A DNA stretch of 64,000 bases from contig NW_027362763.1 of assembly GCF_046119375.1 (NCBI RefSeq), positions 767,250,001 through 767,314,000 of the forward strand, in the 5' to 3' direction. This DNA is from Phyllobates terribilis (Eukaryota). Of the stretch, positions 51,641 through 59,107 are shown piece after piece. The stretch's first letter is position 1; each line of letters starts with the position of its first letter. The notes under the pieces were generated by a model that was not told the DNA's origin, made no database searches, and worked only from the letters and a program-made list of their open reading frames with translations. The position numbers were made by a program, and so were the translations under genes.

Positions 51641-51960
51641 ATGTAGCGGTTACAATAACAACCAATGGGAGCTCACGTATCATAGAATCTTACGAAACAC
51701 AAGTGAGAGTCGCGCTCCTATTGGTGGAAGGATGGCAGCGCGATTACAGGCAGAGAAGGTGACCTGAGCGCAGAGTTGTCGCCTCCTCGGTATTTCCGGT
51801 GCTGAAGCTCCTGCACCACAGCCGGCTGTAGTGTACGGTACAGGTGAGGCTGAGCTGCGGGGAGTGGGGACATTACATATTACACTCGGTGGGCACCTGT
51901 AGCCTTCATACACACCTGCAGCCGAGCGCTGATATAATGGTTGTCAGTGGCACGTGGTGT
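51540..51960. promoter_or_regulatory. CpG-containing, probably bidirectional MKKS promoter
   Basis: Local CpG/GC enrichment, CCAAT at 51662 and ATTGG at 51720, YY1-like motifs on both strands, ETS-like TTCCGG at about 51794, and a splice donor at 51844. Confidence 0.65.
51720..51843 (+). other. MKKS: Probable MKKS exon 1 (5' leader)
   Basis: Strong donor CAG|GTGAGG at 51843/51844 within the CpG patch, upstream of the uORF exons. The transcription start is approximate. Confidence 0.6.
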
Positions 51961-54458: not shown

Positions 54459-55128
54459 CTGTTATTGCAGCTGGGGGACAGGTTTTCCAAAAATGGAAAA
54501 CCCATATAAGGAACGTAGACTCTAAATTCTTTTATATATTTCAAATAACAACCAGAGCAGGTACCTTCCTGCCGCTGCTTGGGTCTCAATGCTTTGGCTG
54601 CAATGGTGACATCATGTTGACAGTGCACGTTACTGCTACTGCCAATCACTGAGCTTAGTAGCTAACACAAGTAATAGCAGCTCAATCTCCACGAGGGAAG
54701 AGAAAACAGGCTATTATGTGCTGAATAGAAGTTGTACTGATAAGAGCAATGAATACAGCTGCATCCTAGATGCACACATACCTTACGTTCAGCCTGTATA
54801 ACTGGGAGGGTCAATCCCAGAAGACACAGTTCTGCATCTTAGATCAGGCCGCAATCAGCATTTCAGGAGTTTTGAAAGTGAATAATGGAATGAAGATTGC
54901 TGACTGAAACTTTGTACAATATGTAACTAACATATCAAAAGCATGTTTTTCATGTCTGAGGTTTCCATAGCCTTTTAGCGGACTGCATTTGACATATCTG
55001 TGTGTATTCTTGGTCCCGCTCGTACTCGAACATGCGTCTTTCTCCAGGCCCTGCTGTGTTATTTCCGATTTGTAGCATTATTTTTCTTATATATATATAT
55101 TTTGTTTTTGTGTAGATTGATCCAAGTG

Positions 55129-55314
55129 ATGGGACTAAAATCAATATGGAAGAGCTACAAAGTTTTGATTGTTATGGGAACAAGTCTTGGAGTAATACAC
55201 TGGGGCTGGATTAACATGCAGTCAAACCCAATATTTCATCCTGAGGGTCAAGGTCGATTACCATCCATTTTTCGGTTTCTTTCAAGTAAAGAAACGGATC
55301 CAAAAGACAAATAA
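55129..55314 (+). CDS. uMKKS1-like upstream microprotein, 61 aa, single predicted TM helix
   Basis: MGLKSIWKSYKVLIVMGTSLGVIHWGWINMQSNPIFHPEG... resembles recalled human uMKKS1 (MSLRNLWRDYKVLVVMVPLVGLIHLGWYRIKSSPVF). It lies in exon 55116-55336 (TGTAG| and |GTAGGT) with strong Kozak GTGATGG. Confidence 0.85.
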   Translation: MGLKSIWKSYKVLIVMGTSLGVIHWGWINMQSNPIFHPEGQGRLPSIFRFLSSKETDPKDK

Positions 55315-55451
55315 TGGTGTGATTGTGGTCCTTTAGGTAGGTGTCTATTCCATCCATCTGTATTCCCAGCTATACCATGCTACAGACCTCCAAAACTAAA
55401 CCTCAGGACTTTCATTTGCACATCTTCTATGTTTAAAATTAACAAATCTGT

Positions 55452-55457
55452 AATAAA
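55452..55457 (+). terminator. Candidate intronic poly(A) signal after the uMKKS1 exon
   Basis: AATAAA about 115 nt past the exon 2 donor. Confidence 0.3.
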
Positions 55458-57773
55458 GTCGCATGTGCATAGCCATATTACAGTCCAGTATGGACAGTCT
55501 TGGAAAAGGCACCCATAGATATATTTGGGGTCTCACTGTACATGCACAAACATGTGAAGTTTTTTATTCTGTCAATTACATATGTTCAAATGGTGACATC
55601 AGTCTTATGTAAGATACTATTCTCATATTTAAGCATTAGTACTAGGGGAAAATAGCTCCAAACATACGGCAGCACATGGGGAAGCTTCCTCCATACAACT
55701 CTTCCTTGTGCATGAGGCATCAAGTCCATCTGTTAAATTATAAAAAAAAAATGTTTAGTATGATTTGTTTATTGAAATCCTATTGACAACTTATCTGGCT
55801 GCCAGATCAACTTAAGGGTTGTTCCCTCACTTTCACTTACTCCTTAAATATGTTCTCCAGTAATGTAATAAAACTGTCCCTGTCACTTAACTCGAACGGC
55901 GTCACGTGTCAGGACAGGCTGCAGTCTGAAGAAACACAGCTCCCGAGATCTGTGTCTCAACTGACAGAGGAGCTGTATTGTAAACGCATGTTCCTCCGTG
56001 AGCCCAGGAGAAGAAATGAATCTATTCCTCGGCCAACTGCGCATGGAGGACTGAGGCTGGAAAAAAATTACTTTTGTGATCAGTTAGCCGAAGAGAAGAA
56101 TTACTTCTTCTCCTGTCACAGACCTTCTCGAGTAGCTCCAGTATGTGAGCTTATGATACGGCTCCTCTGTCAGTTGAGGCACAGGTCTCAAGAACTGTTT
56201 TTCTTCAGACTACAACCTGTTCTGACATGACTACGATGGGCTGCCGTATGAATTACATGATGGGGATAATGTTGTTCAATTCTTGGAGAAGCCATCCAAA
56301 GGGGTATGTTGGCCATCTTTTTTTTTTGTGTAAATGCAAATGCATGATCTGTGGGAAAATAAGAAAATCAGTCTTAAATAACCCATGATGCTCTAGTGCT
56401 ACTCCCTGTCCTTGTTGATGTGCACACTGCATCATGTAAACTACAAGTGTACTGAGCCCAGGCATTGGCTGCAGTGTTCACATGCCATAGACATAACCTC
56501 TCGGCTGCAGCGATGACAGTGGGCAGCAGTGGAGAGGCAGGGCTGGAGCAGCACGGCGTAATTAAGGCTGATTATTGAATTTTACACACAACAAAATCCT
56601 TAAACCCCTTTAAGATTTTTCAGAGGGTTTCTCTTAACTGGATATATTTCTTATTAGGCCTTATAGACATCATTGGAGCCCCCTGTATTCACCATAGTGC
56701 ATGTTATGTTAGGATGGGAACATTCTGTGCTTATGGCTATCGGTGGACGCGTATAGTCAGAGGTTATGTGCCCAACAATGGCCAAAGTCAGGATGAATGA
56801 CTGATCTATCTATGTATAATACATACATAATATTTTAAGCCTTTTTTGGGTGCTTTGCTGTAAAGGAATATATAGTCCAGCAAAAGGCACATGCCTGCCA
56901 AACGGAGCCCAAAAGTACGGTTGGCTTCCTCCTAGTGAATGGGAATGCTCCTGATATATCCGAGACAAAGCGCAATTACCCTTAGGGTGGAGTCAGACAG
57001 GACAGCCATATAAATCAGACCGCTGTCGCCGCTCTCCCGACCCGAGCATGACATCTTCATAGAAATCTATGCAGCGGTCATGCTCGGGTCTGGAGACCTG
57101 CCGCCCAGTCCATGCACTGCGGTTTGATCTTGGTCATACTTATACGGCCGTCTGACTGCGCCCCTACTCTGCGTTTCCTATCTAGTGGCTATAATGTATA
57201 GCTGCCTATATCTTATCCTAGTCATACCAGCCGATGGCTCGGGGGTTTTGCAGCTTTTCTGCAGAGTGCCCCATAGTACAGAAGGGGTTGTCCAGCTCTC
57301 AGCCTTATAATTGTTGGTTCACGAGTACTTCACTAATTTTGTAAAAGACCCCAGTAGTTCCTGACATGTACATCTATAAAATGTATGGCATATCATTGAA
57401 TATTCCATCACTTTGATTGTTATGGATACAACCTCTGGGACTTGCACTGATCCCGAAAATGAATCTGTCACTGTGTTATTTCAGTGCTGCAGCCCCCTTA
57501 ACAGTTTCCTCTGCCATTCTAGTGAATAGTCAGAAAATCAGAGTGAAGAGTCAGCGTTGCAGCTTTTTATACTTTTAGAATCATTGGGGTCCCAGAGATC
57601 AGATCCCCATCATGGTTTATCCTAATTATCATTTTACAGATTGCTTTAAACAAAATTCACAATAGTTTTTGTATTGGAGAATGAATGTTGAATTAAACGT
57701 AATTGTGATTTTTTTTTTTTTTCTTTTAGATTTTTTTTAAATCTGCTCTTCTTGACCTGGAAGCAAAGGTGAA

Positions 57774-57926
57774 ATGAAGCAGAAATCATTTTTGCGGAAG
57801 AATTGGTTCTGGGTCGCGGGGATATCTTTTCTAGGCATTCACTTTGGGACGTATTTTATTCAAAGAGTTGCAAAGAGTTCTGCTAGAGAAACTGTGGCCA
57901 TCAGAGATACTAAAAGCAGCGACTGA
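57774..57926 (+). CDS. uMKKS2-like upstream microprotein, 50 aa, single predicted TM helix (too short for the ORF track)
   Basis: Hand translation MKQKSFLRKNWFWVAGISFLGIHFGTYFIQRVAKSSARETVAIRDTKSSD resembles recalled human uMKKS2 (MKNTSWIRKNWLLVAGISFIGVHLGTYFLQRSAK...). Acceptor (T)nAG at 57728-57729. Confidence 0.87.
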   Translation: MKQKSFLRKNWFWVAGISFLGIHFGTYFIQRVAKSSARETVAIRDTKSSD

Positions 57927-58050
57927 ACAGACTGCCTCTTATACAGCCGTGCCACTGGATAAGTCACAATTCCCCAATGTTCATGCTCTCAGTACTTGCC
58001 AGCGTACATCTGTAATGTCACACATTTCCCCCCCATGTTGGTGTAAGATT

Positions 58051-58056
58051 AATAAA
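58051..58056 (+). terminator. Poly(A) signal between uMKKS2 and the MKKS start codon
   Basis: AATAAA followed by T-rich sequence. Short uORF-only MKKS transcripts are, as I recall, reported in mammals. Confidence 0.55.
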
Positions 58057-58116
58057 TTATATGATTTTTAAATCCTAAACTGATTTAGTTTTCTTGAGGA
58101 ATAGGAATTTGACATA

Positions 58117-59107
58117 ATGGAAAGAGTTGAACAGAAAAAGCAGTCGTTGTGTAGTGCCGGCCCCGTAACCAGTGCATCGCTCAGGCAGGCACTGAGTGTG
58201 ATACAGATGATGGTGACCTCATGCTATGGCCCGTATGGACGACTGAAGCAAATTCATAATGATAGTGGGGGGTATGTTACCACGACATCACAATCCTCTG
58301 CCTTGCTCGGTGGGATTTCGGTCACTCATCCTGCACTACAGTTACTAGTCGCCTCCATCCGTAATCATATCGCTGCCTTCAGTGATTGTGGACTCTTTGC
58401 AGCAATTCTTTGCTGCAACTTGATTGACAGGTGCCTGAGATTACCGGTCTCTACCCACAAGGTGATTAAATTACACGAGAGTCTTATGGACATGTGTTTT
58501 ACTTACCTGAAGTCAGAGGACTGTGCTTGCAGAGTCAATGTGGATTTTAGCCACAGCAAATCGCTGCTTGCCCTAACCCGTTCCGTTCTTTGTAGCAAGC
58601 CAGCCTGCATGATGACCATAAAAGAAGTAGATTATGTCAGTCTACTGATTGTAAAAGCTTTTCTCTACAAAGTGCCCAATGTGACCAGTCCCAATCACCT
58701 GTTAGGAAGAACCCTGATCGTGGCTGTAGAAGGAGCAAGCGTTATGGACTCTGCCTTCGTCCCTGGCGTGCTCATTGAAGCGCCAGCCCGCAGTTGGAGC
58801 AGAACGAGACCTTCTTCCAGACCGCCCCCAACCACCATTAAGTTGGCCTTGTTTTCGGGGTCGTTATGTGGAGAATTCAGTGATACAGGAGATGGCACAG
58901 TGGAAGTTATGGCTGGTGTAGATCCAGAAAAAGTAATGTTGGACCAGTTGATTGATTTAGGGAGACAGCTAGTGAATGATCATGTGCAAATACTTTTGTG
59001 TCAAAAAGTGATCCACCCGTCACTGAAGCAGTATTTGAAGGAGCACGATGTCTTTTCCTTGGACAGATTAGGAGCAGCCTTGATGAAACCATTAAGTGAA
59101 ATGACAG
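58117..59107 (+). CDS. MKKS: MKKS/BBS6 chaperonin-like protein, coding exon 1
   Basis: VTSCYGPYGRLKQIH...TTTSQSSALL...FSDCGLFAAILCC matches MKKS. Donor CAG|GTAATA, phase 1. Confidence 0.97.

What the first reader, a model, noticed from the sequence alone, without database searches (positions are those of the whole stretch)
55129..57926. The two microproteins share an identically spaced motif and may be ancient tandem paralogues
Seen: uMKKS1 has G17-T-S-L-G-V-I-H-W-G-W-I-N-M-Q31 and uMKKS2 has G16-I-S-F-L-G-I-H-F-G-T-Y-F-I-Q30. Both fit G-x-S-x3-I-H-[WF]-G-x4-Q, and both have K4-S5 and a basic/aromatic lead-in. Inference: duplication of one microprotein exon, giving a possible heterodimer whose intramembrane histidines could bind a metal or haem or mediate assembly. 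I do not recall this relationship being described. The peptides are short and hydrophobic, so chance similarity is possible.
Basis: inference. Interest (0 to 1): 0.7.

Follow-up and report, generated by a model that had tools for sequence, protein, structure and literature searches.

The report
uMKKS1 and uMKKS2: likely ancient paralogues
The two small membrane proteins encoded ahead of the frog MKKS gene are the known mitochondrial microproteins uMKKS1 and uMKKS2, and family-level comparison (though not the frog pair alone) indicates that they descend from one ancestral microprotein.

Summary
Both ORFs, residue numbers and the shared pattern are in the window. Transcript contigs put both ORFs and the MKKS start on one spliced mRNA. 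They are frog orthologues of the known uMKKS1 (LOC128706665) and uMKKS2 (LOC128706666).

The frog pair alone is not distinguishable from chance: BLASTP E 0.98, Smith-Waterman P 0.2-0.3.

Family profiles do match:
- 0 of 800 membrane-segment-preserving column shuffles reach that score (maximum 26).
- The basal uMKKS1-like profile scores 13 of 29 uMKKS2 proteins above its best hit among 177,635 PDB sequences.
- The match is strongest for cyclostome and invertebrate uMKKS1-like proteins and weakest for frogs. This favours divergence from a common ancestor over convergence.

His is invariant in both families. Gly, His, Tyr and Gln line one helix face.

New here: a uMKKS1-like uORF precedes MKKS in amphioxus and cuttlefish. 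uMKKS2 was found only in jawed vertebrates.

The heterodimer and metal or haem idea is untested. No paper held in the library describes the paralogy.

The parts
51812..51843 (+). 3' end of non-coding exon 1 of the MKKS mRNA (donor AG|GTGAGG)
   Evidence: The letters that precede exon 2 in the transcript contigs match the window once, at 51812-51841. The sequence is read.
55116..55336 (+). Exon 2 (5' UTR exon), which holds the whole uMKKS1 ORF
   Evidence: Contigs of 2.5-2.7 kb from four runs in two studies cover 55114-55336 and continue directly into 57730 onward. The acceptor AG lies at 55114-55115 and the donor GT at 55337-55338.
55129..55314 (+). uMKKS1 ORF, 61 aa plus stop: a single N-terminal membrane helix and a polar tail
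   Evidence: Translation. 98% identical to a Dendrobates tinctorius protein. The same family holds the primate cluster named 'Alternative protein MKKS / LOC128706665'. AlphaFold2 predicts a helix at residues 3-32 with pLDDT 85-93.
55159..55230 (+). uMKKS1 residues 11-34: the stretch that aligns without gaps to uMKKS2 residues 10-33.
   Evidence: hhalign. Column frequencies.
55337..57729 (+). Intron between the two microprotein exons. It holds repeat or transposon-like inverted repeats around 55880-56230.
   Evidence: Skipped in the transcript contigs. Short high-depth pieces there belong to other contigs. Sequence.
57730..59107 (+). Exon 3: uMKKS2 ORF, an internal AATAAA, and the first coding part of MKKS
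   Evidence: Contig coordinates: record positions are continuous from 55336 to 57730, and 57694-57738 is masked as a repeat. The donor CAG|GTAATA lies at 59107/59108.
57774..57926 (+). uMKKS2 ORF, 50 aa plus stop: a single membrane helix
   Evidence: Translation. Hits named 'LOC128706666 homolog' in frogs, a salamander, crocodilians, turtles, teleosts and a rodent, E 1e-17 to 1e-29. AlphaFold2 predicts a helix at residues 11-48.
57801..57872 (+). uMKKS2 residues 10-33, aligned to uMKKS1 residues 11-34.
58051..58056 (+). AATAAA between the uMKKS2 stop and the MKKS ATG: a candidate internal polyadenylation signal
   Evidence: Its position matches the alternative polyadenylation sites reported for the human 5' UTR (as summarised in PMC11837024). 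Its use in the frog is not shown.
58117..59107 (+). Start of the MKKS (BBS6) chaperonin-like coding sequence
   Evidence: Pfam Cpn60_TCP1, E 1.9e-42.

Best explanation
The two ORFs are the frog orthologues of the known mitochondrial microproteins uMKKS1 and uMKKS2. They sit 66 nt apart on one spliced MKKS mRNA, upstream of the MKKS start codon. Each is a single-pass, N-terminally anchored membrane peptide.

They are most likely paralogues. uMKKS2 would have arisen by tandem duplication of an ancestral uMKKS1-like microprotein ORF that was already linked to MKKS before vertebrates. Jawed-vertebrate uMKKS1 would then have drifted (for example Q to K after the helix, and loss of the Gly at H-2). 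uMKKS2 kept an ancestral-looking core: S-h-h-G-I-H-aromatic-G-x-Y-x-h-Q, where h is a hydrophobic residue.

Shown here:
- ORF identity, one shared mRNA, and family membership.
- Significant family-level similarity in one ungapped register.
- An invariant His in both families.
- The uMKKS1-MKKS linkage in amphioxus and a cuttlefish.

Inferred:
- Common descent rather than convergence.
- Conserved Gly, His, Tyr and Gln lie on one helix face (i, +4, +7, +11, +14). This suggests a polar helix-helix interface used for self-association, mutual association, or docking to a shared partner in the mitochondrial (outer) membrane.
For: Anatomy:
- ORFs and splice sites are read.
- Single transcript contigs join 55116-55336 to 57730-59107 in four runs from two studies.

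Identity:
- Searches give hits named LOC128706665 and LOC128706666 homologs, and 'Alternative protein MKKS'.

Profile against profile:
- uMKKS1 family (43 sequences) against uMKKS2 family (29 sequences): score 30.4-30.5, probability 85-90%, nominal P 2e-6 to 6e-6, 24 ungapped columns.
- Column shuffles that keep the N-flank, membrane segment and tail blocks: mean 11.3, sd 3.3, maximum 26, 0 of 800 reach the observed score. My own Gumbel fit to those figures gives about 4e-4.
- Reversed profiles score 11-13.

- Nine invertebrate uMKKS1-like proteins against vertebrate uMKKS2: score 30.6, 0 of 220 shuffles reach it, Gumbel P 9e-5.

Real-protein controls:
- The best of 177,635 PDB sequences scores 12.6, 11.6 and 12.6 bits against the uMKKS1, uMKKS2 and basal uMKKS1-like profiles.
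- Cross-family scores reach 16.3 bits (uMKKS1 profile on uMKKS2), 15.7 bits (uMKKS2 profile on hagfish uMKKS1) and 20.8-21.6 bits (basal profile on uMKKS2), with 13 of 29 above 12.6 bits.
- No Pfam family matches either group.
- A real second membrane uORF family from invertebrate MKKS mRNAs scores only 9-14 against both families.

Direction of the signal: cyclostomes 35.1, invertebrates 30.6, jawed vertebrates 21.6, frogs 16.2.

Other support:
- MAFFT on a mixed set independently stacked uMKKS2 on uMKKS1 in the same register, with a single one-residue gap.
- Both peptides fold as one long N-terminal helix.
Against: - The aligned stretch is only 24-37 residues and mostly membrane helix, where convergence and compositional similarity are common. 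Column shuffles do not reproduce all the 'grammar' of real membrane helices.
- The frog pair alone is not significant. The frog-only profile scores 16.2, within the null range.
- The uMKKS1 profile gives the window's own uMKKS2 only 6.6 bits.
- The position of one conserved Gly differs in jawed vertebrates: H-3 in uMKKS1, H-2 in uMKKS2.
- Invertebrate mRNAs already carry a different second uORF at the position of uMKKS2. It has W or Y where uMKKS2 has His. If that ORF is the true orthologue of uMKKS2, the His-centred similarity would be convergent.
- A 32-column tree cannot place the uMKKS2 branch.
- Absence of uMKKS2 outside jawed vertebrates rests on two loci and a word-index search.
Confidence: 0.65

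Rival explanations
1. Convergence. The two peptides have independent origins. For example, uMKKS2 descends from the unrelated second uORF seen in invertebrate MKKS mRNAs, or arose de novo in the 5' UTR. They came to look alike because both must insert into the same mitochondrial membrane and perhaps contact the same partner through a Gly/His/Tyr/Gln helix face.
For: - Invertebrate MKKS mRNAs (cuttlefish L003, L008, L009) have a 50-64 aa membrane uORF exactly where uMKKS2 lies. It shares W-x2-K-N/H before the helix and [ST]-Y at its end by eye, but has W or Y instead of His.
- Short membrane helices converge easily.
- Both peptides are mitochondrial.
Against: - That invertebrate uORF2 family scores at null level against uMKKS2 (10.6) and uMKKS1 (9-14).
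- Vertebrate uMKKS2 matches invertebrate uMKKS1-like proteins better than it matches its own co-expressed jawed-vertebrate uMKKS1 (30.6 against 21.6). Co-evolutionary convergence would predict the opposite.
- The match is gapless over 24-37 columns, including the flanks.
Confidence: 0.2
2. Chance. Two hydrophobic peptides of similar length share a few residues, and the reader picked the pattern after seeing it.
For: - BLASTP E 0.98.
- Smith-Waterman P 0.22-0.33.
- The exact motif is present in only 2/43 uMKKS1 sequences.
- The frog-only profile score of 16.2 is within the null range.
Against: - 0 of 800 and 0 of 440 segment-preserving shuffles reach the family-level scores.
- Cross-family HMM scores exceed every one of 177,635 PDB sequences.
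- An independent set of invertebrate sequences gives the same register and score.
- Only one comparison was planned, between two adjacent ORFs, so there is little multiple testing.
Confidence: 0.1
3. The similarity reflects membership of both in a known small mitochondrial membrane protein family, for example Tom7-like small TOM subunits, rather than a private duplication.
For: A weak Pfam Tom7 match to uMKKS1: E 0.13, 12.5 bits against a cutoff of 27, residues 14-28.
Against: - Only 2 of 43 uMKKS1 members and no uMKKS2 member touch Tom7.
- No PDB chain of any TOM or TIM small subunit appears at E up to 10.
Confidence: 0.03

Closest known systems
uMKKS1 / uMKKS2 of the human MKKS 5' UTR (Akimoto et al. 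2013; also 'Alternative protein MKKS' Q9HB66, micro-MKKS63, MKKS3, LOC128706665 and LOC128706666)
   Same: - Same genes: two uORFs, the first 61 aa here against 63 aa in human and the second 50 aa in both, upstream of MKKS on one mRNA.
- An AATAAA between uMKKS2 and the MKKS ATG.
- Single membrane helix. Family membership is shown by sequence.
   Different: - This is a frog orthologue.
- The point at issue, that the two are related to each other, is not stated in any paper I could search. The 2013 paper itself is not held.
- The review held describes conservation across mammals only. Here the uMKKS1-MKKS linkage reaches amphioxus and a cephalopod.
Polycistronic tandem small-ORF genes such as insect tarsal-less / polished rice (from my own knowledge of the literature, not tested here)
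   Same: Several related small ORFs arranged in tandem on one mRNA, produced by duplication of a peptide-coding unit.
   Different: - The tarsal-less peptides are 11-32 aa, soluble, and nearly identical repeats.
- The uMKKS peptides are 50-63 aa membrane proteins, have diverged beyond pairwise detection, and precede a long main coding sequence.
SERCA-regulating micropeptide family (phospholamban, sarcolipin, myoregulin, DWORF, insect sarcolamban; from my own knowledge, not tested here)
   Same: Single-pass membrane micropeptides whose common ancestry is visible only through a few conserved helix positions and profile-level or structural comparison.
   Different: A different organelle and partner, and no sequence relationship. 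These genes are dispersed rather than tandem in one mRNA.
Tom7 and other small TOM subunits
   Same: Small single-pass mitochondrial outer-membrane proteins. There is a weak local resemblance around I-[HR]-W-G.
   Different: The Pfam match is far below threshold and is not shared by the family or by uMKKS2. Tom7 is tail-anchored, whereas uMKKS1 is N-terminally anchored.

Membership tests
uMKKS1 (LOC128706665 / Alternative protein MKKS) | Sequence homology to the named family | tested here: met
   98% identical to the D. tinctorius protein. The profile search retrieves the primate cluster representative P0054 at 1.9e-11, and that cluster is named 'Alternative protein MKKS / LOC128706665'.
uMKKS1 (LOC128706665 / Alternative protein MKKS) | Complete ORF in a 5' UTR exon of the MKKS mRNA | tested here: met
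   Transcript contigs join exon 55116-55336 to the exon that carries the MKKS ATG.
uMKKS1 (LOC128706665 / Alternative protein MKKS) | Mitochondrial membrane localisation and translation in vivo | not testable with these tools
   Known for the human protein only.
uMKKS2 (LOC128706666) | Sequence homology to the named family | tested here: met
   Hits named 'LOC128706666 homolog' in alligator, turtle, rodent and frogs, E 1e-17 to 1e-29.
uMKKS2 (LOC128706666) | Lies between uMKKS1 and the MKKS ATG and is followed by an internal poly(A) signal | tested here: met
   ORF at 57774-57926, AATAAA at 58051, ATG at 58117. Use of the signal is not shown.
One superfamily uniting uMKKS1 and uMKKS2 (paralogy) | Family profiles more alike than composition-matched and real-protein controls | tested here: met
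   hhalign score 30.5 against a null maximum of 26 in 800 shuffles. The invertebrate-only test gives Gumbel P 9e-5. Cross-family HMM scores exceed all PDB sequences.
One superfamily uniting uMKKS1 and uMKKS2 (paralogy) | Pairwise similarity of the two peptides of this genome | tested here: not met
   BLASTP E 0.98. Smith-Waterman P 0.22-0.33.
One superfamily uniting uMKKS1 and uMKKS2 (paralogy) | Similarity increases towards the presumed ancestor | tested here: met
   Scores: cyclostomes 35.1, invertebrates 30.6, jawed vertebrates 21.6, frogs 16.2.
One superfamily uniting uMKKS1 and uMKKS2 (paralogy) | Lineages with a single copy predating the duplication | tested here: inconclusive
   The amphioxus locus has a uMKKS1-like ORF directly before MKKS and no uMKKS2. 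The lamprey locus has none within 10 kb. However, cuttlefish and two other invertebrate mRNAs carry an unrelated-looking second uORF.
One superfamily uniting uMKKS1 and uMKKS2 (paralogy) | Same fold and topology | tested here: inconclusive
   Both are predicted as one long N-terminal helix. A single helix cannot discriminate between the hypotheses.
   It fits 2/43 uMKKS1 and 10/29 uMKKS2 sequences. Only His is invariant. The relaxed core fits 31/43 and 24/29.
Tom7 (PF08038) | Score above Pfam's gathering threshold | tested here: not met
   12.5 bits against a cutoff of 27. Only 2 of 43 members match, and no uMKKS2 member does.

The most novel reading that the evidence does not exclude
MKKS is an ancient operon-like animal gene. 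A uMKKS1-like membrane microprotein has been co-transcribed with the BBS6 chaperonin since before the protostome-deuterostome split. In vertebrates its duplicate, uMKKS2, pairs with it through a conserved Gly/His/Tyr/Gln helix face. The pair would form a hetero-oligomer in the mitochondrial outer membrane whose two invariant intramembrane histidines jointly bind a ligand (haem or a metal) or gate assembly of a partner complex that affects respiration.
Probability: 0.12. Interest if true: 0.8.

Novelty: new variant of a known kind. Interest (0 to 1): 0.5.

Why it matters
uMKKS1 is reported as the dominant protein product of the human MKKS locus, and its knockout lowers respiration (PMC13577902). 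Its mechanism is unknown, and uMKKS2 is almost unstudied.

If the two are paralogues with one shared conserved helix face, several things follow:
- Experiments should treat them as a pair. Redundancy could mask single knockouts, and heteromeric assembly becomes a concrete hypothesis.
- The invariant His and the Gly, Tyr and Gln positions are the obvious residues to mutate.
- The uMKKS1-MKKS linkage in amphioxus and a cephalopod would make this one of the oldest conserved polycistronic arrangements in animals.
- That linkage argues that the microprotein, and not only translational repression of MKKS, is under selection.

Tried and rejected
- Pairwise BLASTP and Smith-Waterman of the frog peptides: no significant alignment.
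- Pfam scans of both peptides and of every family member: only sub-threshold noise (Tom7, EMC10, holin). Rejected as relatives.
- PDB sequence searches with three profiles: nothing below E 0.8.
- Metagenome scan for more invertebrate loci. The first alignment was too diverse to seed. The second found 31 pattern matches, none confirmed.
- Tree of 72 sequences on 32 shared columns. The uMKKS2 branch joins an unresolved basal comb of uMKKS1-like sequences, so the duplication cannot be dated.
- Testing whether the invertebrate second uORF is a uMKKS2 orthologue: hhalign 10.6, not significant.
- Heterodimer modelling. The only single-chain proxy was a Liparis gene model that fuses both peptides (P0050). 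MAFFT stacked the uMKKS2 rows onto the uMKKS1 half, so no valid alignment could be made.
- Akimoto 2013 could not be read.
- First shuffle run timed out and was repeated with fewer replicates.
- Human sequence. No human contig was fetched, saved or compared. One cluster listing named a human protein among its members, and it was not used.
Full report
**1. What is there**

The window holds the 5' part of a dendrobatid frog MKKS (BBS6) gene.
- ORF 55129-55314 encodes 61 aa.
- ORF 57774-57926 encodes 50 aa.
- The MKKS coding sequence starts at 58117 (Cpn60_TCP1, E 1.9e-42).

The exon structure comes from assembled transcript contigs.
- Contigs of 2.5-2.7 kb from four public runs in two studies join a short first exon, ending at 51843, to 55116-55336.
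- They then continue directly to 57730 and onward to about 59107.
- Both ORFs and the MKKS start are therefore on one mRNA. Only 66 nt separate the uMKKS1 stop from the uMKKS2 ATG.
- An AATAAA lies at 58051, between uMKKS2 and the MKKS ATG.

**2. What they are**

The first ORF is 98% identical to a Dendrobates tinctorius protein. It belongs to a family whose primate cluster is named 'Alternative protein MKKS / LOC128706665'. That is uMKKS1, also published as micro-MKKS63 and MKKS3.

The second ORF matches proteins named 'LOC128706666 homolog' in frogs, a salamander, crocodilians, turtles, teleosts and a rodent. That is uMKKS2.

From the literature:
- Both are reported as translated and mitochondrial.

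AlphaFold2 models each peptide as one long N-terminal helix: residues 3-32 for uMKKS1 and 11-48 for uMKKS2.

**3. Is the similarity more than chance?**

For the frog pair alone, it is not.
- BLASTP does not align the helices (E 0.98).
- The Smith-Waterman score of 24 has P 0.22-0.33 against shuffles.
- Seven identities in 17 ungapped positions has P about 0.017, and this measure was chosen after the fact.

The exact motif is not a family signature.
- It fits 2/43 uMKKS1 and 10/29 uMKKS2 sequences.
- K4 is not conserved.
- uMKKS1 Q31 is K in most jawed vertebrates.

At family level the picture changes. I assembled 43 uMKKS1-type sequences: jawed vertebrates, lamprey, hagfish, amphioxus, cuttlefish and unnamed invertebrate transcripts. 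I also assembled 29 uMKKS2 sequences.

| Test | Result |
|---|---|
| Column shuffles that keep N-flank, membrane segment and tail blocks | mean 11.3, sd 3.3, maximum 26; 0 of 800 reach the observed score |
| Reversed profiles | 11-13 |
| HMMER: uMKKS1 profile on uMKKS2 sequences | up to 16.3 bits |
| HMMER: uMKKS2 profile on uMKKS1-type sequences | hagfish 15.7, an invertebrate 14.9, lamprey 14.7 bits |
| HMMER: basal uMKKS1-like profile on uMKKS2 | up to 20.8-21.6 bits; 13 of 29 above 12.6 bits |
| The same kinds of profile against 177,635 distinct PDB sequences | best hits 12.6, 11.6 and 12.6 bits |
| Pfam scans of both families | no family matches either |
| Real second-uORF membrane family from invertebrate MKKS mRNAs, against both families | 9-14 |

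MAFFT, given a mixed set, independently stacked uMKKS2 on uMKKS1 in the same register with one single-residue gap after S5.

**4. Homology or convergence?**

The signal is graded.

| uMKKS1-type subset, against uMKKS2 | hhalign score |
|---|---|
| Cyclostomes | 35.1 |
| Invertebrates only | 30.6 |
| Jawed vertebrates | 21.6 |
| Frogs only | 16.2 |

None of 220 shuffles reach its score, and the Gumbel P is 9e-5.
- The two consensus lines read s-l-i-G-i-H-y-g-W-y-x-l-Q against s-F-l-G-I-H-x-G-T-y-x-i-Q.
- Vertebrate uMKKS2 therefore resembles ancestral-type uMKKS1 more than it resembles its co-expressed jawed-vertebrate neighbour.
- Divergence after duplication predicts that pattern. Convergence driven by co-function does not.
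- I put common descent at about 0.65, convergence at 0.2 and chance at 0.1.

**5. When did it happen?**

This is unresolved.

- uMKKS2 was found only in jawed vertebrates.
- Amphioxus has a uMKKS1-like ORF directly upstream of an MKKS-like gene. No uMKKS2 was found in the 20 kb searched.
- The lamprey locus has uMKKS1 alone within 10 kb.

Three invertebrate MKKS-like mRNAs carry a uMKKS1-like uORF, then a second 50-64 aa membrane uORF, then the chaperonin.
- One is from Sepia esculenta. The runs are identified through PMC10571815.
- Two are from mixed marine samples.
- Their chaperonins are 27-32% identical to frog MKKS, with E 5e-39 to 6e-50.
- Their second uORFs resemble one another. They have W or Y in place of His and are not detectably related to uMKKS2 or uMKKS1.

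So either vertebrates replaced that ORF with a duplicate of uMKKS1, or it is a uMKKS2 orthologue that has diverged beyond recognition. A 32-column tree leaves the uMKKS2 branch in an unresolved basal comb.

**6. Mechanism**

Shown: His is invariant in both families (43/43 and 29/29).

Inferred from helix geometry: Gly17/16, His24/23, Tyr28/27 and Gln31/30 fall within an 80 degree arc of the helix in uMKKS1 and a 60 degree arc in uMKKS2. Gly21 extends that face in uMKKS1 only. This suggests a polar packing face in the C-terminal half of the membrane helix.

The most likely reading is that this face mediates helix-helix association with self, with each other, or with a shared partner. The tools could not model a heterodimer.

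**7. Novelty**

- The microproteins and their arrangement are known.
- None of the papers held in the library that mention them describes a relationship between the two. The 2013 paper itself is not held.
- The review held describes conservation across mammals only. The reach of the uMKKS1-MKKS linkage to amphioxus and a cephalopod is not mentioned in the papers I read.

Noticed in passing
L003:94-2416 (Sepia esculenta transcript); also L002, L004, L008:71-2216, L009:127-2364: Invertebrate MKKS-like mRNAs are tricistronic. A uMKKS1-like uORF (58-69 aa) is followed by a second 50-64 aa membrane uORF and then a 571-595 aa Cpn60_TCP1 protein that is 27-32% identical to frog MKKS. The microprotein-MKKS linkage therefore predates the protostome-deuterostome split.
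   Followed up: partly
L003:325-477, L008:285-473, L009:377-571: The second uORFs of the three invertebrate mRNAs resemble one another (K-x-K/R-F-V-S ... I-x-G ... [ST]-Y). They form a conserved microprotein family with no detectable relation to uMKKS2 or uMKKS1. They carry W or Y where uMKKS2 has its invariant His.
   Followed up: partly
L006:10001-10228 and about 10770 onward (Branchiostoma lanceolatum): The amphioxus uMKKS1-like ORF (75 aa) lies about 540 nt upstream of the MKKS-like start, with no second uORF between them. Two near-identical copies of the microprotein are annotated on the same chromosome (P0073, P0093).
   Followed up: partly
L001:10001-10826 (Synaphobranchus kaupii) and L007:10001-10204 (Lethenteron reissneri): In the eel, uMKKS1 and uMKKS2 lie only 467 nt apart, and no MKKS coding exon is found within 10 kb downstream. 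In the lamprey, uMKKS1 stands alone within 10 kb. The microprotein ORFs may be uncoupled from MKKS, or separated from it by long introns, in some lineages.
   Followed up: no
P0050 (Liparis tanakae), P0025 (Anguilla anguilla), P0038, P0049: Public gene models mishandle this polycistronic locus. One fuses uMKKS1 and uMKKS2 into a 125 aa protein. One splices the uMKKS1 N-terminus onto uMKKS2. Two extend uMKKS1 through the uMKKS2 region in another reading frame.
   Followed up: no
window 58051-58056; window 57984: An AATAAA lies between the uMKKS2 stop and the MKKS ATG, as reported for the human 5' UTR. One run has a contig that leaves the genomic sequence at 57984. Whether a short microprotein-only transcript exists in the frog is not shown.
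   Followed up: partly
window 55880-56230 and 57000-57170: The intron between the two microprotein exons contains inverted-repeat, transposon-like segments. Short high-depth pieces of unrelated transcript contigs map to them, so they are probably dispersed repeats expressed elsewhere.
   Followed up: no
window 51732-51767: A tiny 11-codon ATG ORF lies just upstream of the part of exon 1 seen in the contigs. It could correspond to the minimal 'uMKKS0'-type uORF if transcription starts further upstream. The start site was not determined.
   Followed up: no
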